In this document: positions 27,581 to 41,615 of the stretch, piece after piece | How positions within the stretch are numbered: position 1 is the stretch's first letter | Layout: each line of letters starts with the position of its first letter | Virus record (IMG/VR): IMGVR_UViG_3300005337_000441 | Span: 1-64,000 of that record | Direction: 5' to 3' (one strand) | Length of the DNA: 64,000 bases | Notes under the pieces: generated by a model | What the model was told of the DNA's origin: nothing | The model's input: the letters and a program-made list of their open reading frames with translations, nothing else | The model's database searches: none | Translations under genes and position numbers: made by a program

Positions 27581-30500
27581 TTACGCAGATTTTCTTGTCA
27601 GATCCACTGCGGCTTCGATCCTCTGAAACGATGCCGGTTGTTGCACAGGCTTGACAGCGTTGGGCTGTTGAGCTTGGGCGGGTTGTGCCGCGGCCTTCGT
27701 GACGGCTTGCGTCATGGCTTCGCTGTTCTGCAGCATCTTCTGCAAGACCGAGAGGGTCTGCACATGGATGTCCAGAGACTTGGTCAGGATGTCGTTGGTG
27801 GTGGCCGTGGTCTGTGACGAAGAACCCATCGCTTGCGGACGGCTGACAGTGTCCGGCTGCACGGCAGTTGTCGGAACAACCGGTGCAACACGACCCTGTG
27901 CCATTGGCATGGGCTGACGCACGATCGGAGCAGGCTCCGTCGAAGCGCGTGGCGTCACGGGAGGCTGGCCGCCCGTAGCGTCTCTCACAATGACTGGCGG
28001 CTCATCGCTCATCCGCCTTGCAGCGGGTTTGCTTTGAAGGTCACCACCACCTTGGTAGTTGATGCCGAACTCTTGCGCCTTCTTGGACAGACGTTGGTCG
28101 ATCTTGCGATAGACCTCACCGACCGTCAGAGGACGAGTGCCCTCGTAGAAGTAGCTCCTGTTGGCCGCTGCCGCGTTGGGCAGCACATTGGCTGCGATCT
28201 CGTTGGGATCAGCAGACAAGAACTTGCGTGCCCCGGTCGGACCGAGGAAGTGCGCCAAGTACACGTCCGTCATGTTCGGGTTGGGTTTGACCGAACTGAT
28301 GAAACGCTTGTTGGTTTTGTAGTAGTCCGACGCTGCGATGGTCGAGTCTTCCACGTCAGTGCGACGCGGGTTCGGGCCCATGCGAGGACCTGCGACTTGA
28401 ACCTGCTGATTCCAGCTGGCGTTCGTGAAGCCGAAGAGGCCTTCCGAAGTACCAACCGTAGAGCGAGCGTTGGGGTTCAGGCTCGACTCGACAGCAGCGT
28501 ACGTGAGGAGATCGTTCGGAGGCACGCCTTCTTGACGCGCCACCTTGGTCACCTTGTCCTTCACGTCGCCGTAAGGTCCCGACTGTTTGTCGTCGCCAGC
28601 GGTTGCCACGTCCTTGGGACGCGCTTCCATGTCCGGCATCTTAGCCGCAGCGTTGTACTTGTCGCTTTGTTGGTAGCTTGCCTGCACGCTGCTCGCCTGC
28701 TTGACACCCACGGAGGGTGCGTTTGCAGCCGTTTGCATCGGAGGCTTGATGGCCGCAACGGCAGCCACCGGCTTCGGAGCGGTCACGGGTTCGTTGGCGC
28801 CAGAGACATTCGGACCTTGCGCGAGCTCGGCCACCTTGTCCTTGTCTGACTTGCCATCGTCCTTCACGGTTTGACCCGTGAGTCCCATTTGAGCCACAGC
28901 GAACATCGTGTCGCGCTTGCCCAGCGGCGTGCCGCGAATGGAACCCACGCCACCGCCACCCTTGTTGATCGATGCACCCACCGCCTGAGAGGCAAAGTTG
29001 GGATCGTTCTTCGCGAGTTTGAGGTTACCCTGGATACCAGCAGCTTCCGTGTGCCACGGCTCGCCACCCACCGGGCGGGTGAAGCCGTACTTGCGCATCA
29101 GTCCAAGATCATCCATCGCGTCCAAGTCACCGCTGTTCATGTCGACCGCGAGGCCGTACTCGTGCAGCGAAGTGCCAGGCCTTGCAGCCTTCTTGGGATT
29201 TTGACGGAAGAGCTTTTCTTGTTCAGCGGTGTCACGTACTGCGGCATTCATCGTCACCGACTTGCCCGTGCGTTCACCGTACTCCTGGATCATGGCCAGG
29301 AGTTGTTGCTTCATGGCCGGGTTCATGCCGTCAAGCTTGACCCCGTCACCCATCTTCAGGTACTGCATGGCTTGAGAGCCGTCGCGCACGGGGCCATCGG
29401 CCACCTTAAGCGGACCCCCGAGCTTGCTAGGACCTTCATTGATGGTCTTGTCCACCGGACCCTTCTCACCTGTGGCAGGTTTCTCACGCAGCGGACCATC
29501 TTCGGCCGACTGTGATTCATCCCTGGGAGCAGCCTTGTTGCGGTCCTCGTTGGACTTGACAACTTGAGCCACGACCTTCTTGCCTTCATCGGCTTTCGGG
29601 TCCACAGCAGGTTTCTTGGTCGGATCGATCGCAGCAGTGACAGCGGTGACGCCAGCGACAGCCTTGGCAGCTTTGTCCGCCTTGTCCTTGTCCGCCTTTG
29701 CCTTCTTCTCTGCTTTGTCTTTGTCCGAAGCGGCTTGCTTGTCAGCGGCTTCCTTGGCCGTTGCCGTGCAGACCTTGATCAGCTCTTGAACCTGCGGTCT
29801 GGTGTAAGCCAGTTGCGGCAGATCCTTGAACGGAGAGACCGTCACGTTGTACGGACCGCTCTCGTAGCCGATCAAGCCATAGAACTTGACCTTCTCCGCG
29901 GCCGTCAATTCATCGTGAGCATTCTTCAGGCTCACCTTCTTGTTCACAGCGTAGAGCGCCGTGCAGTTGGTGAGGAAGAACGGTTTGAAGCGAGCGTCGA
30001 ACCATTGGCCCAGTTTAGAGGCCGATTCACCGTCTGCTTTGTCGATAGAGAAGATGTTCAGGAGTTCTTCCGGATCGATCTTCTTGTCCATCAAGACAGC
30101 TTTGTCACCCACGAACCCGACACGGCCGTCCAGGAGGTATTCCTCCAGTGCGAGCATGAGGTGGTTGTGCGATTTGTCACCGACCGTCAGACCGTATTGG
30201 TACATCCGGATCTGTTCGGTATCGTTGACGTTGTCTCGCGTGGAGTATTTGTAGAGCTTGTAAGCACCGTAGCCGACAGCAGCCACTGCTGCGGCGCCAA
30301 GTACCACAGGAGAAGCCAGGACTGCACCGATCGCTGAGATACCGGCACCGACAGCGCCGAGGATCGCAGAACCGACACCACCCGTCATGAGGCTGCCGAC
30401 GAGAGCGACGTTGCGAATCATGCCGACCTTGGAGACCAAGTTGGCCACCATGCCCACACGACCAGCACCTGCAACAGCGCCAGCGATCGGGCGTCCGATG

Positions 30501-33500
30501 GCGCCCAGCGCAGAGCCGACGGCTCCTGCTGCACGACCACCCAGTCCCAACAGACCCTTGGCTCCGTTGAAGACCTTGCCGACCAGACCACCAGCCATGC
30601 TGGCCACCGACCCTACACCGCTGATAACGCTACCCGCAGCGCCAAACAGCCTGCCCGCACCACTGGTGAGGAAACTGAAGACGCCAGACACCTTGTCCAT
30701 GATGGACTTGAAGATATCCTTTTCGGACACGTATTTGGCTTCGGCCGCTTGAAGACCCGGCGCATTGGCGCGACGTTGTGCGTCGGCTTCTGCTTGAGCT
30801 TCCAAGCGGTCTTCCCACGAACCATCCCGACGACCACTGCCGTCACGATCGTTGTAAGCAGGGTTGTCGACCTTGCGGCGACGACGCGTGGTCGTGGTCT
30901 TCTTCGGTGCGGCCTTTTGTGCCAGAGCCTTGTCGGTTTTCTTGCGACCCCGCTTTTTGGTTTCCGGCTCAGCTTCTTCAGCCTTGCCACCAAAGAACGA
31001 CATCGCGCCACCGAGCAACTTGCCCTTCAGACCACCCGCATTGGCCTTGATGGAACCCAGGACCTTGGAACCACGCTCCTTGAGTCCCTTCGTTCCGCCC
31101 AGCGATGCAAGTTTGTCTTTGCCTTGTTGGACCAGTTTATCAAAGCCCGTTTTCGGAGGCTCCACCGGAGCAGCCTTGGCCTTGCGGCGACGGCGCTTAC
31201 CCTTGACGGGCTCAGGTGCGACTTCTTCTTCCTTGGCAAAGCGATTCATGATGCGGTCCTTGAGGGACTTGGCACCACCGAGAATCCCGCTGAACGTATC
31301 GCCAAGCGTCTTGTCAGAGGTGTACTTGGCTTCCGGAGTTTCAAGTTCCGTGCCTTCAGAGCCACCTTCTGTGGTCGTGGTGATTTCTTCGTCGCCACCG
31401 CCTGCTGCACGCTGCGCAGCGAGCTTGCGGCCAACCAAAGTTTTCTTGCCGTAAGGGTTCTTCCTCTTTTCGAGGGTTTCCAGGAGCTTGTCTTTGAGAG
31501 ACTTGCTCTGGTCCTTTTCAGCAGCGCGTTGCGCCGCCAACTTACGACCCACCAGTGTTTTCTTGCCAGAGGGGTTGCGCTTCTTGTCCAGAAGCTCCAT
31601 GGCCTTGTCCTTGAGGGACATGCCTTTGGCGGTGATTTTGTCTTTGAGCTCGCCAGCTTTGCTCTTGAGATCAGTGAACGTGGCGCCACTGGCTCCAGAC
31701 TTCTTGTACTTCTCTTCGTGACGAGGTGGATTTTCACCACGCATCAGGTCACGCATCTCCACGAGCACATCGTAGATGCGCTTGTTGCCGAGGAGACCGA
31801 AGTTCTGGAAGAAGTCCTTGATGCCAGGCAGCCATTTGTCCATGAGCTTGCCACCGAACTCTTGACCCTTTTGCAGCAACATGTCCCAGGTCGAGCGCAG
31901 TGCCTTGATGGTCTTGCCACCGAGGTCCTTCGCCTTTTCTGCGATGCGTTCCAAGCCGGTCTTGACTCGGTTGCCGTACTGGTCGTACACGCCTTCAACA
32001 AGATCTTGAGCGTCAAGGATGACTTCACCTGCCTTGTTGACGATGGCGCCCTTGGCTTTCACCAAGTCGTCCATGGTCTTCAGCACCTGACCCGAGGCTG
32101 AGTCGTAGTACTCGCCCTCACGCAGCAACGAAGCCTTGATCACCGGAGACTTGCGTCCCTTGATGTAGACGTCGCGCACAGCGTACAGCGAGTTCTTCAC
32201 GGTGGCTTTCGCATCCGTGAGGAGATCCTTGGCCTTTTGGATATGGATCGGCAGTTTGTTGTCGATGTAGTCCTTACCGTAGGCGTAGCCTTGCTGAGCC
32301 AGCTCCCCGCCCTTGTCACGCGCTTGGCGCAGCTTGTCAAGGAAGGGATCACGGTAACGGTCATAGAGTTCTTGGGCTTTGTCCATGCCCGGCTTGACGA
32401 TGCGGTCACGACCGTATTCATAGCCGCGAATGGCACCTGCCTTGGCATCTTGAGCACCGCGTTTGACGAGTTCACCAGAGGCCGTCCAGATGTTACCCAG
32501 GATGTCCTGATAGGTGTCCTCACCCTTGTACTTGGAGCCAGTGCGACGTGCACCAGCTCTACCACCGGCCCCACCACCAAAACCACCCTTGCCCGATTCA
32601 ACGAGCTTACGGATGGCCTTGACGTCAGTGGCAATGGCCTTGACAGGGTTGGCAGCTTCTTCCTTCTTCGTGAAGAGCTTCTTGACCTTGTCGACAATAT
32701 CGTCTTGCTGGTCAGCGAGCTCCTGGATGGCAGCCATGTTGTTGCCATTCATCGAGGTCAGGTCGATCTTTTTGCCGCCCGGGGCTGCACCATCACCCAT
32801 GTTCTTGCGAACGTCTTGGGCCATGGGACCACGGTGCTGTTCATCGTCACCTTCGCCTGGCTTGTAGAACCAGTCAAAGATGCCCGTCTTGCGGATGGCG
32901 TTGAGTGCGCGCTTCGGATGCAGCGGGTGGATGTCTTCCTTGGTCTCCTCATCGGACTTGATGAGTTGCTTCGGCAGACGCTTGCCCGTGGCATTGCGGC
33001 GCTTCGGACGAGCCTTCTTGATGGCCGTCTTCTTGTTGCGATCCGAAGTCACAAGACCTTCGTCACGCACGAGCTTCAGGTAAGCTTCCTCATTGATGAT
33101 GAAGTCACCCTTGGCATCGCGGTCAACGAGACCTTGCTCTTCGAGGAGCTCACCGTAGCCGGCGTGGATGAGTTGTTCGATGACACCGCGAGCATCTGGC
33201 GTAGCGCTACGCACATTCATGATGCTCTTGGTCAGACCCAGCTGCCCGCGCAGCGGATCCTCAGCGTTTGTCACCTTGTGGTCAAGCAGCGTGTCCACGA
33301 GTTTCTTCGTGTCCGGATCGAGCATCTTGTACGCGTTAGTCGTCTTGATGTTCTCCGGCGTGAACGCCATGTTGGGGATCGACGACACCTTGGCGATGAA
33401 ATCGGTGATCTTCGCCTTGGTGCCCTCGTCTGTCTTCTTGTCGCCGATGAAGTCCTCTGCCGCATCACGGGCAAAGAAACCATAGCTCGACGTCTTGATC

Positions 33501-35059
33501 TTGTCGGACAGCGACTTCTTCACCATCTCGCCGATTGCTTTGCGATTGACGAACTTGCCGCTGCTCTGATCGTAGTAAACCATCTCGGCTTGCTCATCAC
33601 CCGTCCGCAACACGGTGATTTCACGCAAGATGCGTGCGAGGTAGCCAGGGATGATGTCCGTGATGCTGCGCTGCGTCTTGTCATTGAAGACGCCCACATT
33701 GGACGGAGATGTGATGCCGTAGGGGCTATTGACCCGGTTATCCGGTTGAGAGTCGGTGAAGTAGTTGGCGAATCGATCGATCCCTCGGGCCAACGAGCCC
33801 TTGGGTCCTTCTGCCTTCAAGTACTCTTGCGCCTTGTCGGATTTGCGAAGCTCTCCGATGGCACCGGGTAGGTTAGTGACGGCGTTGGCCCCTTTGGTGA
33901 GGGCGTTACGCAGCGCGGGCACTTTGTCCAAGCGCGGTCGTGCGAAACGACCAACCTTGTCACCCACCTTGTCACCAAGGAAACCTCCGAACGCATTGCC
34001 AGCCAGCTGGGCTCCGGAGAGCTGCTCGCCGCCAATTTCCTTGAGGATGTCGTTCGTTTCCTTGAGCTGCTGGTAACTGTCCACCCCCATGGTAACAGCT
34101 TCCAGACCTTGCTTCACCCCTTTGACATAGTCTTTGATGTCTGCAGTGATGCGCTTCAACCCGCGATCGATCGCGGAGCCTTCACCGAAGAACGAGTTTT
34201 GAATCCTGTCCATGAACTTGGTTCGCGCCAAGTCCTTGAAACGTTCAGAAGCCTTGATCTTCACGAACTCCGGCAACGCGGTGTTCTTGGCGATCGCTTC
34301 GTTTTGTGCTTTGAAGACCTCAAAGTACTGCTTCGACGTCGAAGCAATGTCCGTGAGAGCAAAGTAGCTACGGTATTGTAGCTCCAATGATTTCTTCTGT
34401 ACAGCTTGGGTGATGCGCTCCTGGTAGGAGGACATGCGTCCCACGTTGTTGCTGATCGTGGTCAGGATACCGAGACTTTGATCGAACTCCTTACGGCGGA
34501 TGTTCTCAACAATCTCGTCCTTGGCATTTCGACGTGCCTCAACCTCGGTCTGCGTGGCTTGTTGCTGCTGGAAGATGGAACCCAGGTTCGTTGCGATGCC
34601 TTGGTCTTGCAGCTGTTCTTTGGAGAGAGAAGACGGGCTCGACTCATCCCCGAAGAGGGAAGCGATTCGAGAGGAGATCTTCTTGAGCGTTTTGCGCTCT
34701 TCAGGCACCAGGCGGTCGACCTTCTTGGCCAACCGCGACGCCTGTGGTTTTAGCTCTTTTACCGCGTCATCGTATAGCGATGAGGCTGTGCCTGCGGCTT
34801 TATCGGCCGCATCCACGATGGTCCCGAACTCCTCCGGGAGAGCACTACGGGTCAATCTTGCTAAAAACGATGGGCTCTTGAACTTATCGACCGCTCCTGA
34901 GATGGTGCCCTTGAAGACCTCCGTCGTCGGAGATCGTGACGAGCGTTTCTTCGCATCAGGAGTGAGTTGACTGTCGATTTTCTCGTAGTCAAACTGGTCG
35001 AAATTCAGTTCATCGTCAAGCGAGAAGTCCTCGGTTCGAACTTTCTCATTCTTTGCCAT
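27581..35059 (-). CDS. Tape-measure / tail-associated peptidoglycan hydrolase (phiKZ gp181-like, 2492 aa) with internal S74, M15 peptidase and SLT domains
   Basis: Long Lys/Ala/Gly-rich helical body; RDGSW motif; M15 motifs SLHEYGLAVD and EPWH; SLT motif AAVESSLNPNA...DVYLAHFLGP.GA; divergent from vRNAP beta-prime gene. Confidence 0.85.
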   Translation of the reverse strand: MAKNEKVRTEDFSLDDELNFDQFDYEKIDSQLTPDAKKRSSRSPTTEVFKGTISGAVDKFKSPSFLARLTRSALPEEFGTIVDAADKAAGTASSLYDDAVKELKPQASRLAKKVDRLVPEERKTLKKISSRIASLFGDESSPSSLSKEQLQDQGIATNLGSIFQQQQATQTEVEARRNAKDEIVENIRRKEFDQSLGILTTISNNVGRMSSYQERITQAVQKKSLELQYRSYFALTDIASTSKQYFEVFKAQNEAIAKNTALPEFVKIKASERFKDLARTKFMDRIQNSFFGEGSAIDRGLKRITADIKDYVKGVKQGLEAVTMGVDSYQQLKETNDILKEIGGEQLSGAQLAGNAFGGFLGDKVGDKVGRFARPRLDKVPALRNALTKGANAVTNLPGAIGELRKSDKAQEYLKAEGPKGSLARGIDRFANYFTDSQPDNRVNSPYGITSPSNVGVFNDKTQRSITDIIPGYLARILREITVLRTGDEQAEMVYYDQSSGKFVNRKAIGEMVKKSLSDKIKTSSYGFFARDAAEDFIGDKKTDEGTKAKITDFIAKVSSIPNMAFTPENIKTTNAYKMLDPDTKKLVDTLLDHKVTNAEDPLRGQLGLTKSIMNVRSATPDARGVIEQLIHAGYGELLEEQGLVDRDAKGDFIINEEAYLKLVRDEGLVTSDRNKKTAIKKARPKRRNATGKRLPKQLIKSDEETKEDIHPLHPKRALNAIRKTGIFDWFYKPGEGDDEQHRGPMAQDVRKNMGDGAAPGGKKIDLTSMNGNNMAAIQELADQQDDIVDKVKKLFTKKEEAANPVKAIATDVKAIRKLVESGKGGFGGGAGGRAGARRTGSKYKGEDTYQDILGNIWTASGELVKRGAQDAKAGAIRGYEYGRDRIVKPGMDKAQELYDRYRDPFLDKLRQARDKGGELAQQGYAYGKDYIDNKLPIHIQKAKDLLTDAKATVKNSLYAVRDVYIKGRKSPVIKASLLREGEYYDSASGQVLKTMDDLVKAKGAIVNKAGEVILDAQDLVEGVYDQYGNRVKTGLERIAEKAKDLGGKTIKALRSTWDMLLQKGQEFGGKLMDKWLPGIKDFFQNFGLLGNKRIYDVLVEMRDLMRGENPPRHEEKYKKSGASGATFTDLKSKAGELKDKITAKGMSLKDKAMELLDKKRNPSGKKTLVGRKLAAQRAAEKDQSKSLKDKLLETLEKRKNPYGKKTLVGRKLAAQRAAGGGDEEITTTTEGGSEGTELETPEAKYTSDKTLGDTFSGILGGAKSLKDRIMNRFAKEEEVAPEPVKGKRRRRKAKAAPVEPPKTGFDKLVQQGKDKLASLGGTKGLKERGSKVLGSIKANAGGLKGKLLGGAMSFFGGKAEEAEPETKKRGRKKTDKALAQKAAPKKTTTTRRRRKVDNPAYNDRDGSGRRDGSWEDRLEAQAEADAQRRANAPGLQAAEAKYVSEKDIFKSIMDKVSGVFSFLTSGAGRLFGAAGSVISGVGSVASMAGGLVGKVFNGAKGLLGLGGRAAGAVGSALGAIGRPIAGAVAGAGRVGMVANLVSKVGMIRNVALVGSLMTGGVGSAILGAVGAGISAIGAVLASPVVLGAAAVAAVGYGAYKLYKYSTRDNVNDTEQIRMYQYGLTVGDKSHNHLMLALEEYLLDGRVGFVGDKAVLMDKKIDPEELLNIFSIDKADGESASKLGQWFDARFKPFFLTNCTALYAVNKKVSLKNAHDELTAAEKVKFYGLIGYESGPYNVTVSPFKDLPQLAYTRPQVQELIKVCTATAKEAADKQAASDKDKAEKKAKADKDKADKAAKAVAGVTAVTAAIDPTKKPAVDPKADEGKKVVAQVVKSNEDRNKAAPRDESQSAEDGPLREKPATGEKGPVDKTINEGPSKLGGPLKVADGPVRDGSQAMQYLKMGDGVKLDGMNPAMKQQLLAMIQEYGERTGKSVTMNAAVRDTAEQEKLFRQNPKKAARPGTSLHEYGLAVDMNSGDLDAMDDLGLMRKYGFTRPVGGEPWHTEAAGIQGNLKLAKNDPNFASQAVGASINKGGGGVGSIRGTPLGKRDTMFAVAQMGLTGQTVKDDGKSDKDKVAELAQGPNVSGANEPVTAPKPVAAVAAIKPPMQTAANAPSVGVKQASSVQASYQQSDKYNAAAKMPDMEARPKDVATAGDDKQSGPYGDVKDKVTKVARQEGVPPNDLLTYAAVESSLNPNARSTVGTSEGLFGFTNASWNQQVQVAGPRMGPNPRRTDVEDSTIAASDYYKTNKRFISSVKPNPNMTDVYLAHFLGPTGARKFLSADPNEIAANVLPNAAAANRSYFYEGTRPLTVGEVYRKIDQRLSKKAQEFGINYQGGGDLQSKPAARRMSDEPPVIVRDATGGQPPVTPRASTEPAPIVRQPMPMAQGRVAPVVPTTAVQPDTVSRPQAMGSSSQTTATTNDILTKSLDIHVQTLSVLQKMLQNSEAMTQAVTKAAAQPAQAQQPNAVKPVQQPASFQRIEAAVDLTRKSA

Positions 35060-35112: not shown

Positions 35113-36735
35113 ATGTCTTTAATTAGCCAAACGCCGTTCAATATCGCACTGCTCATCCCGAGCGATGCAGATGTTGCCGGTATGCGCCCCGTGAAAGTGC
35201 TGGACATCAACGATGGTCTGAGCAAAAACTTTCACCCCGATGGTCTGTTCTCGGTGGAAACGTTCGGCAAAGTGGGTGAGGAAAGGCGCAACCGTCTCTT
35301 CTCCTACATCGACATGCACATCAGCGTCTTCCACCCCGTGGTGTATAAGGCGCTGTTGGACTTGAAGAGCCTGTACGGTGACATCATCGCAGGCACGGGT
35401 TATGCGGTGTTCGACCCCGAAACCAACGATTTCGAAAAGTCCGACGTCACTCAAGGGGACACGGGCTTTGCCTTCTTCGTGAAGCACTTCGAGAAGATCC
35501 AGTTCGAGTCGCGCCCCAGCGCCAAGCGGGAGTTCAACATCGCGCTGGTGAACAAGTACCGCAAGAACTGCCTGATGGACAAACTCGTCGTCATGCCGGC
35601 AGGCCTGCGTGACTACACGGTCGACGAAAACTCCAAGCCGAGTGAAGACGAGATCAATGGCCTGTACCGTCGCGTGCTCAATGTGGCTTCGGTCATCGAG
35701 AACGTCAACGCCAAGAGCAACGTCGAGTACCTGGACTCCACCCGCTACGGCCTGCAACAGCGCGTCAACGAGATCTACGAGTACATCGTGAATCTGCTTG
35801 AAGGCAAGAGCAAGCTCATTCAGGGCAAGTGGGCCTCGCGCAAGATCTTCGACTCCACTCGAAACGTGATTTCCCCGCACGTCTCCAAGACGGACGAGTT
35901 CTTCACGGGTCGCACGGTGTCTTCGAATCAGACCATCGTCGGCTTGTACCAGTACCTGCGCTGCATCATGCCGCTGGCGGTCAAGCACGTGCGCGACACG
36001 TACCTCTCCAAAGTGTTCCTGGGTCCGAACTCACCCGCCGTGCTGGTGAACAAGAAGACCTACAAGAAGGAACTGGTCAACCTCGATCCGCGTTACTACG
36101 ACGAGTGGATGACGTACGAGGGTCTGGAAAAGCTCATGGCCCGGTTCGGTCAGGAAGAGCTCCGTGACGACGTCCTGGAGATCGAGAACTACTACGTGGG
36201 TCTGCTGTACAGGCAAGGTGGTCATGTGCGCTTCGTGCAGGACATCTCCGACGTCCCCATCAACGGCTCGCACGATCCTCGCGAACTCCTCACGCCCATC
36301 ACGTTCTGTGAACTGCTGTACCTGTCGGTGTTTGCTGACGCGGCGAGCATCCCTTGCCTGCTGACACGTTATCCGGTCACGGGGTATGGCTCGATCTATC
36401 CGAGCTACGTCTACCTCAAGACCACGGTGCGTGCTGAACAGGTCAAGGTCCTGGGCGACGACTGGGAAACCGTGATCGGCACAGCCTACGAGTTCCCCAT
36501 CAAAGGCGAACAGTACTTCAACGCGATGAGTCCTTCGACCACTCACGTGGCTCGTCTGGGCGCAGACTACGACGGCGACACTTGCTCGCTGATCTGCCTG
36601 CTCACCGAAGACGCCAAGGTGGAAGTCAAGAAGAAGCTCAACAGCCGCGACTACTATGTGGGTGTCAATGGCAAGATGGCGTTCAGCGCCGGCAACGACA
36701 TCATCGATCTGGTGTTGGCCAACGTCACGAGCTGA
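35113..36735 (+). CDS. rpoC: Virion RNA polymerase beta-prime subunit, catalytic part (phiKZ gp180-like), uninterrupted
   Basis: FHPDGLFSVETFG, IQGKWASRKIF..TRNVI, TRYPV, LGADYDGD catalytic Asp triad. Confidence 0.9.
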   Translation: MSLISQTPFNIALLIPSDADVAGMRPVKVLDINDGLSKNFHPDGLFSVETFGKVGEERRNRLFSYIDMHISVFHPVVYKALLDLKSLYGDIIAGTGYAVFDPETNDFEKSDVTQGDTGFAFFVKHFEKIQFESRPSAKREFNIALVNKYRKNCLMDKLVVMPAGLRDYTVDENSKPSEDEINGLYRRVLNVASVIENVNAKSNVEYLDSTRYGLQQRVNEIYEYIVNLLEGKSKLIQGKWASRKIFDSTRNVISPHVSKTDEFFTGRTVSSNQTIVGLYQYLRCIMPLAVKHVRDTYLSKVFLGPNSPAVLVNKKTYKKELVNLDPRYYDEWMTYEGLEKLMARFGQEELRDDVLEIENYYVGLLYRQGGHVRFVQDISDVPINGSHDPRELLTPITFCELLYLSVFADAASIPCLLTRYPVTGYGSIYPSYVYLKTTVRAEQVKVLGDDWETVIGTAYEFPIKGEQYFNAMSPSTTHVARLGADYDGDTCSLICLLTEDAKVEVKKKLNSRDYYVGVNGKMAFSAGNDIIDLVLANVTS

Positions 36736-36737
36736 TC

Positions 36738-37136
36738 ATGACCAAACTCACGAGCGACTACCGCGAAGGCAAAGGCAGCACGGCCACCTCGGAAGGACAC
36801 GAGTACCAACTCGACATCCTCTTCGAGTTGACGTGGGACCGCAAGCCTACCATCAAGAATGTCTCGGATCTGGACTGGATCCTGGAATACACCGAGATCG
36901 ACGAAGAGCGTGTCAAGAACGCTGACCTCGGAGTTCCCATCCTGATCTACTGGTCCGATGCACTCCAACACTGGGTGACGCTGGACGGGGCACATCGCCT
37001 CACAAAAGCCAAGCGTGAACACAAGCATGGAATCGGTTGTCGTATCGTTGACGAGGACATGCTCGCCAAGGCTCGAATCGATCACCACAAAAAACATGTC
37101 GCCGTGGAGAGCATGCCTCTTTACGCCAAGTGGTAA
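36738..37136 (+). CDS. ParB/Sulfiredoxin-fold small protein with C-terminal AVES-MPLYAKW tail (132 aa)
   Basis: PILIYW....HWVTLDGAHRL matches the ParB N-terminal PI.V...DG.HR motif. Confidence 0.65.
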   Translation: MTKLTSDYREGKGSTATSEGHEYQLDILFELTWDRKPTIKNVSDLDWILEYTEIDEERVKNADLGVPILIYWSDALQHWVTLDGAHRLTKAKREHKHGIGCRIVDEDMLAKARIDHHKKHVAVESMPLYAKW

Positions 37137-37154: not shown

Positions 37155-40100
37155 ATGCAAATGCATTTCAACGTCTTTTACCACCAGTACGGTATCAGAC
37201 GAATCGATCACCTGCTGACCCCGAAGCTGCTCACGCTTCAGAGTCTGCCCCGAGATGCGATGGTCCACTACCTCAGTGACGACCCGCAAGCTCCTGACCT
37301 GGATGTCTCCCAGCCCTGGCTGGCGACGTCCAACAAGAACGTGGCTGTGGACTATGCGACACAGCTCACTGACCTGCTGGGCAATCCTCACCCTCACATG
37401 GGGAAGACCGTGCGTGACCTCACGCGCGACTTCCATCAAAGCCACCGCAAGTTCAAGTTCACGCCGGACGGGGTGAACAAGATCGGTGACCAGACGGTGC
37501 TGCAAGTCATGAACTACAGCTACCTGGATGCGATGTACACCTACGCACCGGTGCCCCTCACGCCCTGGTACAAGTTCTGGAACAACAACCGCCTGCTGTT
37601 CGGCACCATTGCCAAGATCGGTCAGAGCAAGTCGAAGAACCACTTCGTCTTTCTGAAGGTGCCTCAACAACTGCCGTCCTACCAGCTGCTCAACCTGTAC
37701 GCTGACAAGGAAGTGGCGCGCGTCACACTGCAGGTCTTCAACTCCTACGCGGATCTCATGATCTTGCAGCTGTGGAAATGGCTGGAAGGCGAGGATCGCG
37801 AGGTGACGGTCTTCGGTGCGCTCACGCAAAGCGACCTGGCCAAGGTGAACATCGTCTTCGTCGTGCCGGACGGCCGCTCGATCGTGATGAACCTGGGCTA
37901 CATGGACAGTTGGATCAAGGGTCATGCCAAGCTCGACGCTCAGAAGAGCCAACAGCAGCAAGACCCCCAGGCGCTCAAGAAGCTTTTCTTGAAGTTCCTG
38001 ATCACGGTGACCGCTGCCATCCCGGAAGCCGAAGTCGCTGAGATCCAAGGCGCCCAAACACCGGAAGACAAGCAAGACCAGACCGAGCTTCAAGCGGAGT
38101 CCGACGAGTACCTGCGTGAACATGACGATGACGCCGAAGACAGCATCGACGATCACGAGTTCGAGGACGCCGCGGATCTGATGTCTGGTCTTGGCAAAAA
38201 CACCAAGACGCTTAAAAAGCGTCCGAATGAAGACGTTGCTCAGCGCCTGCAAGCTCTGGACAAGGACATCGACTCCTCGATGTCTTCCGCAACACTGGAC
38301 CTGGGCGAGAAGCTCAAGACGATCGATCAAGACCTGAAGGTGCTCGACCTGCTCAACAGCCGTCGCCTGAAGGATCGTGGCATCCGTCTGGACAAGGAAG
38401 GCGAGCAAGTGCCGCCGGCCGCTCCGGTGGAAGACATTCCGCTGGAAGTACTGCAGCAGCAGATCTACCAGCCTGTCGACTACGAAGAAGCGCTGCTCAA
38501 GCAGATCAATGAATCGGCGGACTTCGGTCTGCTCTCGGCTGCGGACTTCCGCAGGGCTACAGCTGACGTTCAGAAGTACAAGACGTCGCAAGACCCTTAC
38601 GGGTCAGGCCAGCTCACCGTGCAAGCCATGGTGGTCACGCCTGAGGCGATCAAGCTCAATCCGCAAAAGACCGAGATCACGGTGTCGGACAAGGTCGTGG
38701 ACAAGACGATGGCTCAGTCCTCGCTCATGGCCTTCGATCACGACTATATCAAGAACGTCTACAAGAAAGACATGCTGGGCATGATCAATAACCTGCAAAA
38801 AGCAGGCGTGATCGTGCGCAACCATGAAATCGAACTGGACCACAGCGCGCTGGGCACCTACGAGAACCACACGCTCGAACTCAAGCCGATCGATGGCCAG
38901 CCTTCCAAGCTGAGGTTCCGTCTGCCGCAGGTGCAAACCGATGGCACGTTCGTGGCCAATGGCAACAAGTACGTGATGCGCAAGCAGCGCGTGGATGTAC
39001 CCATTCGCAAGACCAACGCCTACACGGTGGCTTTGACGAGCTACTACGGCAAGACCTTCGTCACGGTCAACCAAAAGCAGGCGAACAATTCGCTGGCTTG
39101 GATCGTGAAGGAACTCAACAAAGCGTCGTTCTCGGACAACCACCCTTACATCACGCGCGTGGCGCCTGCCCAGGTCTTCGACAACAACTTCGAAGCCCCG
39201 TGGATCTACAACGCCCTGGCCAACCACTTCAAGTCGGTGACCACGAAGGACTACACGTTGGTCTTTGACCATCAGGAACGTCTGGGTCTCTTTGAAGAAG
39301 CCAGCGAAGGCGGTGAGAAGCTCGGTCCCTACGATCCGGTGCATGCCGCCAAGATCGAAAACGCGGGTGGTAAGGCGTGGAAGTACCGACTCGTCGGCTA
39401 CAGCAACGCAGGCCTGGGCCACATCGTGGTCGACCGTGCCAACCAGTTCTGGCTGCTCGGTCGTGAAGGCGAGCCTCAGCCGCTGGGCGACATCTACCAA
39501 GTGTTGCAACTGGACGCTCACAAGGCTCCGGTGGACTTCACCGAAGTGCGCATCTTCTCCAAGACGGTGCCTGTCGGTGTGGTGCTCGGTTACACCATCG
39601 GTTTCAAGAACCTCTTGAAGCTGCTGGGTGCCAAGCATGAAGTCGTGGAAGGTCGCCGGCTGCCGGACCTCACACCACACCAGTACGTCATTTCCTTCAA
39701 GAACGAGAAGTACATTCTCGATCGCCGTCAACGCACCGCCTCCATGATCCTTTCGGGGTATCTGGACTACGAACGCCAACTGCGCTCGTACGACGCGGCG
39801 GAGTTCGACAAGAAGGACGTCTACCTGAACCTGCTGGCCTCCAAGGGCCTGGGGTCTTTGTACATCCGTGAGCTTGAACTCACCAACCAGCTCTTTGTCG
39901 ACCAGATCACTCTGTCGATCCTGCAGCAAATGAACGAGCCTTCGACGTTCCACGGTCTGCTGATCCGTGCAACGCAGATGCTGGAGACCTACCACCATCC
40001 GGACTCGCAGGACATGAAGTCCATGCGCATCCGCGGCTACGAACGTTTCCCTGGTGCGGTCTACAAAGAACTCACGGCGCAAATCCGTCAGTTCAAGAAC

Positions 40101-41615
40101 CGCAACATCGCGGGCAAGTCCCGTGTGGAAATGAGTCCGTACCAGATCTGGCAGACGGTGATGAAGGATCCGGCCATCAAGCTGGTGGAAGACATCAACC
40201 CGATCCAGAATCTGAAGGAAGCCGAAATCATCACGTACGTGGGTACGGGTGGCCGCTCCAAGGACTCAATCAACAAAGAAAACCGTGCGTTCCATCCGAA
40301 CGACATGGGCATCGTCTCTGAAGCCACGGTGGACAGCTCGGACGTGGGTATCAATGCCTACCTCTCTGCGAACCCCAACTTTGCCGACATGCGCGGCATC
40401 GCGCTGCCGGACAAGAACTTCAACCCTGCGAACCTGATCTCCACCAGTGCACTGCTGGCGGTGGGCGCCAACCACGACGACCCCAAGCGCGTGAACTTCG
40501 TGTCGATCCAGCAATCGCACACCATCGCCGCTCACGGCTATCACCAGCCCGTCGTGCGCACCGGTTACGAATACGTGATCGGTAACCGTACCACGGACAT
40601 GTTTGCCTACTTCGCCAAGGACGACGGCAAGGTGGTGAGCGTGGACGACAACGGCGTGATCATCGAGTACGCGGACGGCACCAAGAAGGGTGTGACGCTC
40701 GGCCGTGTCTACGGCAAGGCCGAAGGCAGCGTCTATCCGCACGACATCGTCTGTCCCCTGAAGGTGAACGCGAAGTTCAAGAAGGGTGACACGATCGCTT
40801 ACAACACGGGTTTCTTCGAGCCAGACTTCCTCGACCGCAGCAAGGTCGTGATGAAGAACTCCATGGTCGTGAAGGTGGCACTCCTGGAGTCCAGCAACAC
40901 GCACGAAGACGCCTCCGCCATCAGCAAGAGCGTGGGCCAACGCTTGAGTGCTCGTACCACCAAGGTGCGTTCGTTCACCGTGGACTTCAAGCAACGTCTG
41001 AACGATGTCGTGAAGGTCGGCGATTCCGTCGGTCCCAAGGACATCCTGATGGTGATCGAAGACGAGATCACGTCCAACACCAACATCTTCGACCAGCAGT
41101 CGCTGGAAGTGCTGAAGAACTTCTCCAAGCAAGCCCCCAAGGCCAACTACCTCGGGACGATCGACAAGATCGAGGTGTTCTACCACGGCGCCAAGCAAGA
41201 CATGAGCGCTTCGCTCAAGATGCTGGCTGACCGCAGTGATCGCCAGCTCGGTGAGGTTTGCCGCGCTTCCAACAAGCCGGTCATCACCGGTCAAGTCAAC
41301 GACGACTACCGGGTCTCCGGTGTGCCGCTCGCACTCGACAAGGCCGAAGTGAAGATCTACATCACGGTGACCACCACCGCCGGTGTGGGTGACAAGGGCG
41401 TGTTCGCATCACAAATGAAGAGCGTGATCGGTGAGGTGATGGACTACAAGGTTCACACCGAAGAAGGTCAAGAGGTTGAAGCGATGTTCGGTTACCGCTC
41501 CATCGCGGCCCGTATCGTGGAAAGCCCTGTGATCATCGGCACCACCACGACTCTGTTGAAAGTGATCGCCAAAAAGGCGGTCGACATCTACCGAGGATCT
41601 GTGCAAAAAGCCTAG
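37155..41615 (+). CDS. rpoB: Virion RNA polymerase beta subunit, large part (phiKZ gp178-like, 1486 aa)
   Basis: YVMRKQRVDVPIRK, TYVGTGGRS, DDPKRVNFVSIQQSH, GVGDKGVFASQMKSVI beta-family motifs. Confidence 0.9.
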   Translation: MQMHFNVFYHQYGIRRIDHLLTPKLLTLQSLPRDAMVHYLSDDPQAPDLDVSQPWLATSNKNVAVDYATQLTDLLGNPHPHMGKTVRDLTRDFHQSHRKFKFTPDGVNKIGDQTVLQVMNYSYLDAMYTYAPVPLTPWYKFWNNNRLLFGTIAKIGQSKSKNHFVFLKVPQQLPSYQLLNLYADKEVARVTLQVFNSYADLMILQLWKWLEGEDREVTVFGALTQSDLAKVNIVFVVPDGRSIVMNLGYMDSWIKGHAKLDAQKSQQQQDPQALKKLFLKFLITVTAAIPEAEVAEIQGAQTPEDKQDQTELQAESDEYLREHDDDAEDSIDDHEFEDAADLMSGLGKNTKTLKKRPNEDVAQRLQALDKDIDSSMSSATLDLGEKLKTIDQDLKVLDLLNSRRLKDRGIRLDKEGEQVPPAAPVEDIPLEVLQQQIYQPVDYEEALLKQINESADFGLLSAADFRRATADVQKYKTSQDPYGSGQLTVQAMVVTPEAIKLNPQKTEITVSDKVVDKTMAQSSLMAFDHDYIKNVYKKDMLGMINNLQKAGVIVRNHEIELDHSALGTYENHTLELKPIDGQPSKLRFRLPQVQTDGTFVANGNKYVMRKQRVDVPIRKTNAYTVALTSYYGKTFVTVNQKQANNSLAWIVKELNKASFSDNHPYITRVAPAQVFDNNFEAPWIYNALANHFKSVTTKDYTLVFDHQERLGLFEEASEGGEKLGPYDPVHAAKIENAGGKAWKYRLVGYSNAGLGHIVVDRANQFWLLGREGEPQPLGDIYQVLQLDAHKAPVDFTEVRIFSKTVPVGVVLGYTIGFKNLLKLLGAKHEVVEGRRLPDLTPHQYVISFKNEKYILDRRQRTASMILSGYLDYERQLRSYDAAEFDKKDVYLNLLASKGLGSLYIRELELTNQLFVDQITLSILQQMNEPSTFHGLLIRATQMLETYHHPDSQDMKSMRIRGYERFPGAVYKELTAQIRQFKNRNIAGKSRVEMSPYQIWQTVMKDPAIKLVEDINPIQNLKEAEIITYVGTGGRSKDSINKENRAFHPNDMGIVSEATVDSSDVGINAYLSANPNFADMRGIALPDKNFNPANLISTSALLAVGANHDDPKRVNFVSIQQSHTIAAHGYHQPVVRTGYEYVIGNRTTDMFAYFAKDDGKVVSVDDNGVIIEYADGTKKGVTLGRVYGKAEGSVYPHDIVCPLKVNAKFKKGDTIAYNTGFFEPDFLDRSKVVMKNSMVVKVALLESSNTHEDASAISKSVGQRLSARTTKVRSFTVDFKQRLNDVVKVGDSVGPKDILMVIEDEITSNTNIFDQQSLEVLKNFSKQAPKANYLGTIDKIEVFYHGAKQDMSASLKMLADRSDRQLGEVCRASNKPVITGQVNDDYRVSGVPLALDKAEVKIYITVTTTAGVGDKGVFASQMKSVIGEVMDYKVHTEEGQEVEAMFGYRSIAARIVESPVIIGTTTTLLKVIAKKAVDIYRGSVQKA

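What the first reader, a model, noticed from the sequence alone, without database searches (positions are those of the whole stretch)
36738..37136. ParB/Srx-fold gene between the two virion RNAP genes, carrying an apparent head-processing tail
Seen: 132-aa ORF with PILIYW...TLDGAHRL (ParB-N/sulfiredoxin nucleotide-binding motif), no HTH, ending HHKKHV-AVE-SMPLYAKW. It starts 2 nt after the beta-prime stop. Established: the phiKZ gp175 protease cuts after S/A/G-x-E in head proteins, and stand-alone ParB/Srx domains act as NTPases or nucleotide-handling enzymes. Inference: the protein is packaged, trimmed at AVE and ejected with the vRNAP, so it could be an immediate-acting nucleotide-metabolising effector (anti-defence or vRNAP co-factor).
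Basis: partly seen in the sequence, partly recalled or inferred. Interest (0 to 1): 0.6.

Follow-up and report, generated by a model that had tools for sequence, protein, structure and literature searches.

The report
Jumbo-phage ParB-like cargo with protease-type tail
A small nucleotide-binding-type protein encoded between the two virion RNA polymerase genes of an uncultured jumbo phage ends in the same short tail as the phage's own head protease, which suggests it is loaded into the capsid, trimmed and injected with the DNA, and that this tail is a reusable packaging tag.

Summary
It lies 2 nt after the stop of a vRNAP subunit gene and 18 nt before the next one.

**Fold.** The fold is ParB/sulfiredoxin. 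A profile matches SbnI at E 1.2e-5, and VIA gives Z 9.0 for SerK, 8.5 for Srx and 8.3 for ParB. The DGxHR motif is invariant. There is no HTH and no Pfam model. The family is phrog_17560, with 892 representatives.

**Delivery context.** Elsewhere the domain is fused to virion-delivered carriers (MuF, portal, lysozyme). At three or more independent places it is fused to, or inserted in, jumbo-phage vRNAP subunits. One such fusion, RP31 ORF39, is detected in virions by mass spectrometry.

**The tail.** AVE alone is chance level. The decisive feature is the extreme C-terminus, PLYAKW-COOH. In the whole 216-kb genome only one other real gene ends this way: the S80 prohead protease (PGYANW). 118 of 120 homologous proteases end in W. 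In SPN3US this C-terminal propeptide is auto-cleaved and is needed for prohead incorporation. The upstream site V-A-V-E|S matches the published cleavage logo. It also matches sites in this phage's internal head proteins. Unrelated genes in the same slot of relatives carry the same tail.

**Verdict.** This is probably a packaged, trimmed, ejected ParB/Srx enzyme. Its biochemical activity is unknown, and nothing has been shown experimentally.

The parts
36738..37136 (+). CDS of the 132-aa stand-alone ParB/Srx-fold protein (P0001; family phrog_17560)
   Evidence: Translation. phrog_17560 at E 1.7e-18. AF2 model with pLDDT 85. Fold matches. Profile match to SbnI at E 1.2e-5.
36984..36998 (+). D83-G-A-H86-R87, the DGxHR phosphate-binding motif of the ParB/Srx fold
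   Evidence: D83, H86 and R87 are invariant and G84 is at least 90% conserved in 104 family members. The motif aligns to DGVHR of SbnI and to GERR of ParB.
37098..37112 (+). V121-A-V-E124 | S125, the predicted prohead-protease cleavage site (P4 to P1')
   Evidence: It matches the SPN3US gp245 logo: A-x-E with V preferred at P4 and S at P1' (PMC10052503). VA.ES occurs 3 times in 110,465 ORF residues of the genome. The same phi-A-x-E-S occurs near residue 120 of two internal head proteins and in the protease propeptide. Cleavage has not been shown.
37116..37133 (+). P127-L-Y-A-K-W132-COOH, a C-terminal tail motif shared with the prohead protease
   Evidence: Only 3 of 1600 ORFs in the genome end P.[YFW]..W; two of these are real genes, this one and the protease. 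Only 3 of 9803 ORFs in 147 other loci end this way. P127 is nearly invariant in tail-bearing relatives. pLDDT is low (55-61), so the tail is probably flexible.
35113..36735 (+). Virion RNAP beta'-N-like subunit (phiKZ gp180 type), immediately upstream
   Evidence: phrog_2986 at E 1.9e-182. The ORF is open from TTG 35053, but the probable start is ATG 35113, judged from homologue lengths and the divergent lysin start at 35059.
37155..41615 (+). Virion RNAP large beta-N-like subunit (phiKZ gp178 type), immediately downstream
   Evidence: phrog_3148 at E 0. No terminator-like site lies between the three genes on the + strand.
44156..44920 (+). S80 prohead maturation protease (phiKZ gp175 type). 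Its last residues (44900-44917) are PGYANW-COOH, preceded by LATE|S, ME|D and ALE|L sites.
   Evidence: phrog_3014 at E 7e-70. PF20034 on its cluster. C-terminus. 118 of 120 homologues end in W and 89 of 120 match P.[YFW]..W.
27581..35059 (-). gp181-like 2492-aa tail lysin, divergent neighbour that marks the conserved vRNAP block
   Evidence: Peptidase_S74, VanY and SLT. phrog_3201. The same arrangement occurs in RP31, RSL2, the phiKZ-like phage and Moabite.

Best explanation
The gene encodes a single-domain ParB/sulfiredoxin-fold protein of a widespread, unnamed phage family (phrog_17560). The phage most likely carries it in its head as cargo.

Shown:
- The fold, and an intact DGxHR phosphate-binding motif.
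- The absence of any DNA-binding or dimerisation module.
- Recurrent fusion of this domain to proteins that are delivered by virions, including jumbo-phage virion RNAP subunits.
- A C-terminal tail that copies the conserved C-terminal end of the phage's own S80 prohead protease, preceded by a V-A-x-E|S protease-type site.

Inferred:
- The P-x-Y-x-x-W-COOH tail docks the protein onto the same prohead-core receptor that recruits the protease.
- After assembly the protease cuts after E124 and removes the 8-residue tag.
- The mature 124-residue enzyme stays in the head and is ejected with the DNA and the vRNAP, in chimalliviruses into the early infection vesicle.
- There it binds or turns over a nucleotide (NTPase, switch or phosphotransfer; nuclease is less likely) at the very start of infection.

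Relatives that fuse the domain to a vRNAP subunit lack the tail. This fits the view that fusion and tail are alternative ways of getting the same domain packaged.
For: **Fold.**
- Foldseek's top hits are all ParB/Srx members.
- VIA gives Z 9.0 for SerK (91 residues aligned), 8.5 for Srx and 8.3 for ParB.
- A 104-sequence profile hits SbnI at E 1.2e-5 across the DGxHR core.
- W47, D83, H86 and R87 are invariant.

**Delivery context of the domain.**
- It is fused to MuF/DNA-pilot, to portal+InPase+GNAT, to ART-PolyVal, to endolysin and to helicase. These are the polyvalent-protein architectures of PMC5512222.
- The PA5oct homologue is annotated 'structural protein, ESI-MS/MS'.
- RP31 ORF39, a beta'-N subunit with this domain at its C-terminus, was found in virions with 26 peptides and 41% coverage.

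**Links to vRNAP.**
- A separate gene occupies the slot in the window, L011, L013, L015 and the P0010 contig.
- C-terminal fusions occur in RP12/RP31, FLC4-3B, L113 and L131.
- The domain is inserted inside the large subunit in L041.
- These cases sit at three or more separate places on the domain tree.

**The tail.**
- In the 215,768-bp genome only this gene and the prohead protease, among real genes, end P.[YFW]..W.
- 118 of 120 protease homologues end in W.
- Protease and cargo carry the motif together in four genomes.
- The background rate is 3 of 9803 ORFs, and all three hits are cargo-like.
- Unrelated slot genes carry it too: L011 192 aa (VAKE|S...PLFNRW) and L089 228 aa (GLE|S...PSFGEW).

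**Experimental precedent.**
- SPN3US gp245 removes a 64-residue C-terminal propeptide. A truncation lacking the last 26 residues is active but is not incorporated into proheads (PMC7411985).
- The cleavage logo is A-x-E with V at P4 and S at P1' (PMC10052503).
- The same phi-A-x-E-S lies near residue 120 of two internal head proteins of this phage.
Against: - There are no proteomic, cleavage or expression data for this uncultured phage. No RNA run holds it.
- The E of the site is absent from about a third to a half of the tail-bearing relatives, so trimming cannot be universal.
- In RP31 the fused protein runs at 74 kDa against 75.2 kDa theoretical. It is therefore not cut at its conserved P-A-x-E linker, although that table's masses are coarse.
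- The receptor of the protease tail is unknown.
- In cultured phages the protease end varies: phiKZ PGFMR, Psa21 PAYMR, SPN3US-like GVRSW, RSL2 none. The SPN3US experiment therefore concerns a diverged tail.
- Tail-less free-standing homologues exist in EL, Psa21, Huxley and Xoo-sp14. Psa21 gp219 is annotated 'hypothetical protein' while several neighbouring genes are annotated 'virion structural protein'.
- No catalytic activity can be assigned from sequence.
Confidence: 0.58

Rival explanations
1. It is a genuine accessory subunit or co-factor of the virion RNA polymerase. On this reading the protein binds the beta'-N/beta-N assembly, enters the head as part of the pre-assembled vRNAP, and acts in early transcription, for example by handling NTPs at the polymerase.
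For: The gene lies between, and is probably co-transcribed with, the two vRNAP genes. The domain is covalently fused to beta'-N in at least four genomes and is inserted inside the large subunit in L041. In SPN3US the vRNAP assembles before it is packaged (PMC5694885).
Against: Of the 80 nearest beta'-N loci in IMG/VR, only 3 have the domain, and phiKZ, RSL2 and Moabite lack it, so the polymerase does not need it. Most family members are far from RNAP genes or sit in non-chimalliviruses such as PA5oct. Unrelated tail-bearing genes occupy the same slot, which points to a cargo hot spot. If the protein rode in on the vRNAP it would not need a tail of its own. The complex prediction could not be run.
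Confidence: 0.17
2. It is a non-packaged enzyme made during infection, in the cytoplasm or the phage nucleus. On this reading the shared C-terminal motif serves another purpose, such as binding the protease or another common partner, regulating turnover, or localisation.
For: Free-standing, tail-less homologues lie among nucleotide-metabolism genes, next to thymidylate synthase and dTMP kinase in Xoo-sp14, or next to tRNAs in Huxley. Psa21 gp219 is not annotated as a virion protein. Nothing shows packaging for this phage.
Against: The only other real gene in the genome with this ending is a protein whose job is inside the prohead. The motif is preceded by a protease-type site that also occurs in internal head proteins. 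The family is repeatedly fused to head-delivered carriers.
Confidence: 0.15
3. It is a selfish or mobile insert, a free-standing ParB-type nuclease gene that targets the junction between the vRNAP genes. The resemblance of the tail to the protease end would then be a coincidence.
For: The slot and the vRNAP genes themselves hold many sporadic insertions of 0.4-6 kb in related genomes. ParB-like domains can be nucleases (PMC5512222). Presence of the gene is patchy.
Against: There is no DNA-binding or second nuclease module. The gene is conserved with the same junction at 62-80% identity. The tail motif is conserved across a subfamily and across unrelated slot genes at a background rate of about 3 in 10,000 ORFs. 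The domain core clusters with other tail-bearing members.
Confidence: 0.06

Closest known systems
phrog_17560 proteins of cultured jumbo phages (Pseudomonas phage EL ORF075, Psa21 gp219, Erwinia phage Huxley/Machina gp11 'putative ParB', Xanthomonas phage Xoo-sp14 gp29, and the C-terminal half of PA5oct EST35_0140)
   Same: Same domain family: 27-41% identity, the same Y-x-E...S-T N-terminal motif, and W47, R58 and DGxHR conserved. BFVD models match at E 1e-8 to 1e-11. The PA5oct protein is virion-associated by MS.
   Different: None of them has the P-x-Y-x-x-W tail or lies between the vRNAP genes. None has been studied functionally.
Ralstonia phage RP31 ORF39 / RP12 ORF42 (vRNAP beta'-N subunit with a C-terminal ParB-like domain)
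   Same: Same domain at the same genomic position, directly before the large vRNAP subunit. The protein is present in virions by LC-MS/MS.
   Different: There the domain is covalently fused through a linker with a conserved P-A-x-E, has no C-terminal tail, and is apparently not cleaved off. The fusion branch is separate from the window's clade on the domain tree. The original paper does not mention the extra domain.
DdrB-like ParB domains of phage polyvalent proteins (phage P1 DdrB; Iyer et al. 2017, PMC5512222)
   Same: ParB/Srx-superfamily domain that is restricted to phages, occurs solo or fused to MuF, lysozyme, ART and similar carriers, is linked to head packaging and early delivery, and has no ParA partner.
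   Different: No member of the family was reported to hit the DdrB-ParB Pfam model, so this looks like a distinct family. The nearest solved relatives are SerK/SbnI. P1 DdrB is thought to be processed by its own metallopeptidase, not by a prohead protease.
Free serine kinases SerK / SbnI (ParB/Srx fold)
   Same: Best sequence-profile match (SbnI, E 1.2e-5) and best structural match (Z 9.0, model residues 6-115), with a shared P-[IV]-L-V...DG-x-HR core.
   Different: SerK and SbnI have a second, C-terminal substrate-binding domain of about 140 residues, which is missing here. Nothing indicates a serine substrate.
Capsid-targeting signals: the T4 N-terminal CTS of IPI-III and Alt, and the C-terminal propeptide of the SPN3US gp245 / phiKZ gp175 prohead proteases
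   Same: A short terminal peptide that brings a protein into the prohead core and is then removed by cleavage after glutamate (PMC7411985, PMC10052503, PMC5694885).
   Different: In giant phages all known cargo propeptides are N-terminal, and a C-terminal one is known only for the protease itself. Here the protease-type C-terminal end appears on cargo proteins. In the papers I read and searched I found no such description.

Membership tests
ParB/sulfiredoxin (ParB/Srx) fold superfamily | The alpha/beta core fold shared by Srx, ParB-N, SerK/SbnI, Noc and KorB | tested here: met
   AF2 model with pLDDT 85. The top Foldseek PDB matches listed are ParB/Srx members at prob 1.00. VIA Z 9.0 for SerK, 8.5 for Srx and 8.3 for ParB, covering model residues ~21-115.
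ParB/sulfiredoxin (ParB/Srx) fold superfamily | Conserved phosphate-binding G-x-x-R / DGxHR motif at the strand-helix junction | tested here: met
   D83, H86 and R87 are invariant and G84 is at least 90% conserved in 104 sequences. The motif aligns to DGVHR of SbnI and GERR of ParB.
ParB/sulfiredoxin (ParB/Srx) fold superfamily | Match to the curated Pfam model ParB_N (PF02195) at its gathering score | tested here: not met
   P0001 has no hit at E <= 0.1. Only 2 of 104 relatives reach E 0.055. Membership therefore rests on fold and on profile-to-SbnI similarity.
Canonical partition ParB (CTP-dependent DNA clamp) | HTH parS-binding domain, C-terminal dimerisation domain, GERRxRA box, and a ParA partner | tested here: not met
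   The 132 residues are filled by the N-domain plus a short tail. The motif is DGAHR. No parA-like gene was seen among the neighbours examined.
Sulfiredoxin | Catalytic cysteine in the GGCHR motif | tested here: not met
   Alanine (A85) occupies that position, and the position is variable in the family.
SerK/SbnI free serine kinases | Two-domain architecture with a C-terminal substrate-binding domain | tested here: not met
   The protein ends about 45 residues after DGxHR. The matches cover only the N-domain of the 240-256-residue kinases.
DdrB-like ParB domain of polyvalent proteins | Match to the family's Pfam model | tested here: not met
   No such hit was reported for P0001, for 104 relatives, or for 20 multidomain relatives.
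DdrB-like ParB domain of polyvalent proteins | Restricted to phages, solo or fused in head-delivered polyvalent proteins, and next to virion genes | tested here: met
   Fusions to MuF, portal, ART-PolyVal, InPase, endolysin and helicase. In the window the gene lies within a block of virion genes. It works like this family but is not filed as a member.
phrog_17560 | Profile match | tested here: met
   E 1.7e-18 over residues 7-111.
Substrates of the giant-phage S80 prohead protease | Cleavage motif A-x-E, with V at P4 and S at P1' preferred | tested here: met
   The site is V121-A-V-E124|S125. The logo is from PMC10052503. VA.ES occurs 3 times in 110,465 residues.
Substrates of the giant-phage S80 prohead protease | Presence in proheads or virions, and an observed new terminus after Glu | not testable with these tools
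   This is an uncultured rhizosphere-metagenome phage. There are no proteomics data and no RNA runs.
Proteins with a prohead-protease-type C-terminal targeting propeptide | A C-terminal end shared with the cognate protease of the same genome | tested here: met
   G000: PGYANW versus PLYAKW. The same pairing is seen in three other genomes. 118 of 120 proteases end in W.
Proteins with a prohead-protease-type C-terminal targeting propeptide | The tail is necessary and sufficient for encapsidation | not testable with these tools
   Only indirect precedent exists: the SPN3US am66 truncation (PMC7411985).

The most novel reading that the evidence does not exclude
A clade of nucleus-forming jumbo phages uses a portable C-terminal tag for loading cargo into the capsid. 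The tag consists of a prohead-protease site (phi-A-x-E|S) followed by the protease's own terminal motif P-x-[YF]-x-x-W-COOH. It loads arbitrary cargo enzymes (ParB/Srx, ParB-GNAT, and unrelated 190-260-aa proteins) into the prohead core and then releases them. The gap between the two virion RNAP genes serves as a hot spot where such cargo genes are inserted, or fused outright to the polymerase. This would be the first C-terminal capsid-targeting sequence for cargo in giant phages, and it would be a ready-made tag for engineering.
Probability: 0.42. Interest if true: 0.78.

Novelty: new variant of a known kind. Interest (0 to 1): 0.62.

Why it matters
How giant phages choose the dozens of proteins they pack into the head and inject with their DNA is largely unknown. 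Only N-terminal propeptides, and a hypothesised C-terminal signal on the protease, have been described.

A short C-terminal motif shared by the protease and by several unrelated cargo proteins would make that question directly testable. It would also give a small tag for loading foreign proteins into jumbo-phage capsids, as the T4 CTS does.

The finding also defines a large phage family of stand-alone ParB/Srx domains (892 representatives, no Pfam model) as likely early-delivered enzymes. It shows that jumbo-phage virion RNAP subunits, like the N4 virion RNAP, act as carriers for effector domains.

Tried and rejected
- **Direct database hits.** Megablast of the 7-kb region against phage records found nothing. 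Pfam and NCBIfam gave no family for the protein. The word-index protein search found only 5 relatives. I therefore used the one exhaustive search, with a 5-sequence profile.
- **Locus search.** The search for related loci with the 104-sequence alignment failed for lack of a conserved stretch. It was repeated with a closer alignment.
- **AVE as evidence by itself.** Rejected as chance level.
- **An N-terminal propeptide cut at GHE22.** Rejected. Residues Y8, E10, S14 and T15 upstream of it are conserved across the whole family, including non-chimalliviruses.
- **A programmed -1 frameshift that would make a beta'-N-ParB fusion like RP31.** Rejected. The open extension upstream of the ATG is not conserved: 100 codons here, about 40 in L011 and L013, and 8 in L015. 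I saw no slippery heptamer.
- **Cleavage of the RP31-type fusion at its conserved P-A-x-E linker.** Not supported by the published masses: 74 kDa observed against 75.2 kDa theoretical.
- **Complex prediction (beta'-N + P0001).** Nothing was tested.
- **Expression.** No RNA run holds the sequence. The only full holder is the probable source rhizosphere metagenome.
- **The other tail-bearing slot proteins.** Atlas look-ups gave only 'hypothetical viral protein', with weak ART/RES-like leads for L089. Pfam and PHROGs gave nothing.
- **A receptor for the tail.** None could be named.
Full report
**Observation.**
- It starts 2 nt after the TGA of the upstream gene and ends 18 nt before the ATG of the next.
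- The neighbours are jumbo-phage virion RNA polymerase subunits: phrog_2986 at E 1.9e-182 upstream and phrog_3148 at E 0 downstream. By the subunit table of PMC5468394, these are the beta'-N (phiKZ gp180-type) and beta-N (gp178-type) subunits.
- A gp181-like 2492-aa lysin is divergent upstream.
- The window is the first 64 kb of a 215,768-bp IMG/VR virus contig. The contig comes from a rhizosphere metagenome.
- Its nearest cultured relatives, Ralstonia phages RSL2, RSF1 and RP12, share only about 42% identity in the beta'-N subunit.
- The gene is conserved, with the same stop+2nt+ATG junction, in contigs at 80% and 62% protein identity (L013, L011). It is also conserved in L015 and in the contig of P0010. 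It is a real gene.
- No terminator-like site separates the three genes on the + strand.

**Fold and family.**
- Pfam and NCBIfam give nothing. PHROGs gives phrog_17560, 'unknown function', at E 1.7e-18.
- The word search found only five relatives. I therefore ran the exhaustive search with a profile. It returned 892 representatives at E <= 1e-3 and 427 at E <= 1e-10. Most are 105-130 residues long; a minority are embedded in larger proteins.
- In 104 aligned members W47, D83, H86 and R87 are invariant. Y8, E10, Y23, R58, P67, G84, L88 and A91 are nearly so.
- An AlphaFold model built on this alignment has mean pLDDT 85.
- Foldseek's best solved matches are all ParB/Srx-fold proteins: sulfiredoxin, ParB-CDP, SbnI, Noc, KorB, PadC and SerK.
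- VIA-align gives Z 9.0 for the free serine kinase SerK (91 residues, model 6-115), Z 8.5 for Srx and Z 8.3 for ParB.
- The 104-sequence profile matches SbnI at E 1.2e-5 over P-I-L-V...DG-x-HR.
- The ParB/Srx fold is therefore confirmed, and its closest solved branch is SerK/SbnI. There is no HTH, no dimerisation domain, no Srx cysteine and no second SerK domain.
- None of the 104 members reaches a Pfam ParB model. This is an unmodelled family of the superfamily.

**Where the domain occurs.**
- In multidomain relatives it is joined to Mu-F/DNA-pilot minor head proteins and to portal+InPase+GNAT.
- It is also joined to ART-PolyVal+cytidylyltransferase, NUDIX, LigD 3'-phosphoesterase and metallophosphoesterase+DUF4326.
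- Other partners are endolysin and a helicase.
- These are the 'polyvalent protein' architectures that Iyer et al. interpret as head-packaged, early-delivered effectors. They describe a ParB/Srx family (DdrB-like) as a hub of these architectures (PMC5512222). The present family did not hit that Pfam model, so I treat it as analogous and not as a member.
- In the non-chimallivirus PA5oct, the domain is the C-terminal half of a protein annotated 'structural protein, ESI-MS/MS'.

**Link to the virion polymerase.**
- In phiKZ-like phages, RSL2 and Moabite the two vRNAP genes abut.
- Among the 80 closest beta'-N loci in IMG/VR, about 50 have gaps under 70 nt. Only three contain the domain, and all three are C-terminal fusions to beta'-N (L113, L124 = RP12, L131). 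RP31 and FLC4-3B are fused in the same way.
- In L041 the domain is inserted in the middle of the large subunit. Residues 699-798 lie between segments that align to residues 510-713 and 794-1169 of the window's subunit.
- On a tree of the domain core, these fusions fall at three or more separate places, and the window's clade is a fourth. The tree is poorly resolved, with 109 columns.
- RP31's fused ORF39 was identified in purified virions with 26 peptides and 41% coverage, at 74 kDa against 75.2 kDa theoretical. So a protein containing this domain does travel in a chimallivirus virion.
- The authors of that paper did not comment on the extra domain.

**The tail.**
- S/A/G-x-E by itself is uninformative: 1.6 sites are expected in 132 residues.
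- A subset of the family ends in P-x-[YF]-x-x-W-COOH. At least 26 of the 154 proteins on hand end in W. P127 is nearly invariant in that subset, which was selected only for the terminal W.
- I scanned all 1600 stop-to-stop ORFs of at least 60 aa in the whole contig for this ending and found three. One is a spurious 79-aa frame. The second is this gene. The third is the head maturation protease at 44156-44920 (...ALELVSNVAKPSQQFQSPKPGYANW). That protease matches phrog_3014 and Pfam Peptidase_S80.
- Of 120 homologous proteases, 118 end in W and 89 match P.[YFW]..W. Typical ends are PLYTKW, PLYKKW and PGYAKW.
- Protease and cargo carry the motif together in four genomes:
  - G000: protease PGYANW, cargo PLYAKW.
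  - The L011 contig: protease IPLYKKW, cargo SPLFNKW.
  - G001: protease LPTFSRW, cargo LPAFARWI.
  - G002: protease KPNFIKW, cargo KPAFLSW.
- In 9803 ORFs of 147 other loci the motif occurs three times, and each hit looks like cargo. One is the ParB-GNAT protein of L056, one is its immediate neighbour, and one is a 228-aa non-ParB gene in the vRNAP slot of L089 (GLE|SLTPSFGEW).
- L011 has a second, unrelated 192-aa slot gene that ends VAKE|SIATPLFNRW.
- Fused versions of the domain lack the tail.

**What is known about the protease end.**
- In SPN3US the protease gp245 removes a 64-residue C-terminal propeptide by autocleavage. An amber fragment lacking the last 26 residues is catalytically active but absent from proheads. 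[quoted passage not shown]
- All other known propeptides in that phage are N-terminal.
- The cleavage logo is A-x-E at P3-P1, with V preferred at P4 and S at P1'.
- P0001 has H-V121-A-V-E124|S125. VA.ES occurs only three times in 110,465 ORF residues of this genome.
- The same phi-A-x-E-S is found in the protease's own propeptide (LATE|S). It is also found near residue 120 of two proteins that PHROGs calls internal head proteins (DVAIE|S and KIALE|S). That is the position where SPN3US and phiKZ inner-body proteins are cut.
- The model's confidence drops to 55-61 in the tail, as expected for a flexible linear motif.

**Interpretation.**
- The most economical reading is that the tail is a copy of the protease's prohead-targeting end, preceded by a release site. 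On this reading the ParB/Srx protein is head cargo that is trimmed to 124 residues and ejected.
- Fusion to a vRNAP subunit, MuF or portal is an alternative route to the same end. This explains why fused versions have no tail.
- I rate this reading at about 0.58.
- What the enzyme does is not shown. The intact DGxHR motif and the SerK/SbnI/Srx/ParB precedents argue for nucleotide binding with hydrolysis or phosphotransfer. A nuclease role is possible. In chimalliviruses the injected proteins first share the early infection vesicle with the DNA and the vRNAP (bioRxiv 10.64898/2026.04.21.720040). The target may therefore be the phage's own early compartment rather than the host cytoplasm. That last point is inference.

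**Caveats.**
- There is no experimental evidence for this phage.
- The Glu of the site is missing in about a third to a half of the tail-bearing relatives.
- RP31's fusion is apparently not cut at its conserved P-A-x-E linker.
- The terminal motif varies in cultured phages: phiKZ PGFMR, Psa21 PAYMR, SPN3US-like GVRSW, RSL2 none.
- The receptor is unknown.
- The rivals are a true vRNAP accessory subunit, a non-packaged enzyme whose tail has another use, and a selfish insert. They are scored in their own sections.

**Novelty.** The protein is a new member of a known superfamily, and 'ParB/Sulfiredoxin domain-containing protein' already labels its EL and Psa21 relatives in UniProt-derived tables. 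I did not find the following in the papers I read or searched:
- the protease-type C-terminal tail on cargo proteins;
- the use of the vRNAP gene junction as a cargo slot;
- the repeated fusion or insertion of this domain into jumbo-phage vRNAP subunits.

I file the finding as a new variant of a known kind (capsid-targeting propeptides; polyvalent delivery of ParB/Srx domains).

Noticed in passing
L041:4910-10024 (IMGVR_UViG_3300029985_000036): A 1704-aa vRNAP large subunit has the phrog_17560 ParB-like domain inserted in its middle (residues 699-798). The flanking segments align to residues 510-713 and 794-1169 of the window's subunit.
   Followed up: partly
L089:6992-7678 (IMGVR_UViG_3300023440_000005): In this relative the slot between the two vRNAP genes holds an unrelated 228-aa gene that ends GLE|SLTPSFGEW, the same protease-type tail. 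The Atlas gives only viral hypothetical clusters, with weak ADP-ribosyltransferase/RES-like leads.
   Followed up: partly
L011:7385-7963 (Logan contig SRR16126897_13066): A second slot gene (192 aa, no family hit) follows the ParB-like gene and ends VAKE|SIATPLFNRW. This is almost the same tail as its neighbour's (VAKE|SIPSPLFNKW) and as that of the protease of the same contig (IPLYKKW).
   Followed up: partly
L056:5893-6663 and L056:6989-7762 (IMGVR_UViG_3300002026_000025): Two adjacent tail-bearing genes lie far from the vRNAP genes. One is a 256-aa protein of unknown family (APEYLKW). The other is a ParB-like + GNAT acetyltransferase fusion (KPAFLSW).
   Followed up: partly
window:35053-35115: The mechanical ORF of the beta'-N subunit starts at TTG 35053 and would overlap the divergent lysin start (35059). 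The likely start is ATG 35113, preceded by AGGA, which gives 540 aa as in the 97%-identical L013 homologue.
   Followed up: yes
L083-L162 (80 beta'-N loci); e.g. L084, L088, L114, L121, L136, L146, L150, L154: Many related genomes have insertions of 0.4-6 kb within or between the two vRNAP genes. These include split matches and ORFs of 390-600 aa, probably introns, homing-endonuclease genes or extra genes. They do not carry the tail.
   Followed up: no
L163-L168 (protease genes of phiKZ, SPLA1a, RSL2, FLC1-1B, MIZ-Pa99, Psa21): The protease C-terminus varies by lineage. phiKZ and Psa21 end P-G-F-M-R and P-A-Y-M-R. The SPN3US-like phage and FLC1-1B end in W without the proline. RSL2 and the EL-like phage differ altogether. 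I did not examine whether cargo tails co-vary with these ends.
   Followed up: partly
G000:C1:156469-157878 and 160113-161468 (outside the window; L175, L176): Two paralogous internal head proteins (phrog_2497) carry phi-A-x-E-S (DVAIE|S, KIALE|S) near residue 120. These are probably their maturation sites. A third protein (147072-148304, no family) has RIALE|S at 169.
   Followed up: partly
L004:7930-7990, L014, L131 (linker of the beta'-N-ParB fusions): The linker between the polymerase part and the ParB-like domain has a conserved P-A-[VILM]-E-[SE]-[FW]-S-L. In two genomes it has a second A-V-E just before the domain. Published RP31 masses suggest that it is not cleaved.
   Followed up: partly
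window:27581-35059 (-): A 2492-aa gp181-like protein combines an endosialidase-chaperone (Peptidase_S74) domain, a VanY-type peptidase and an SLT transglycosylase.
   Followed up: no
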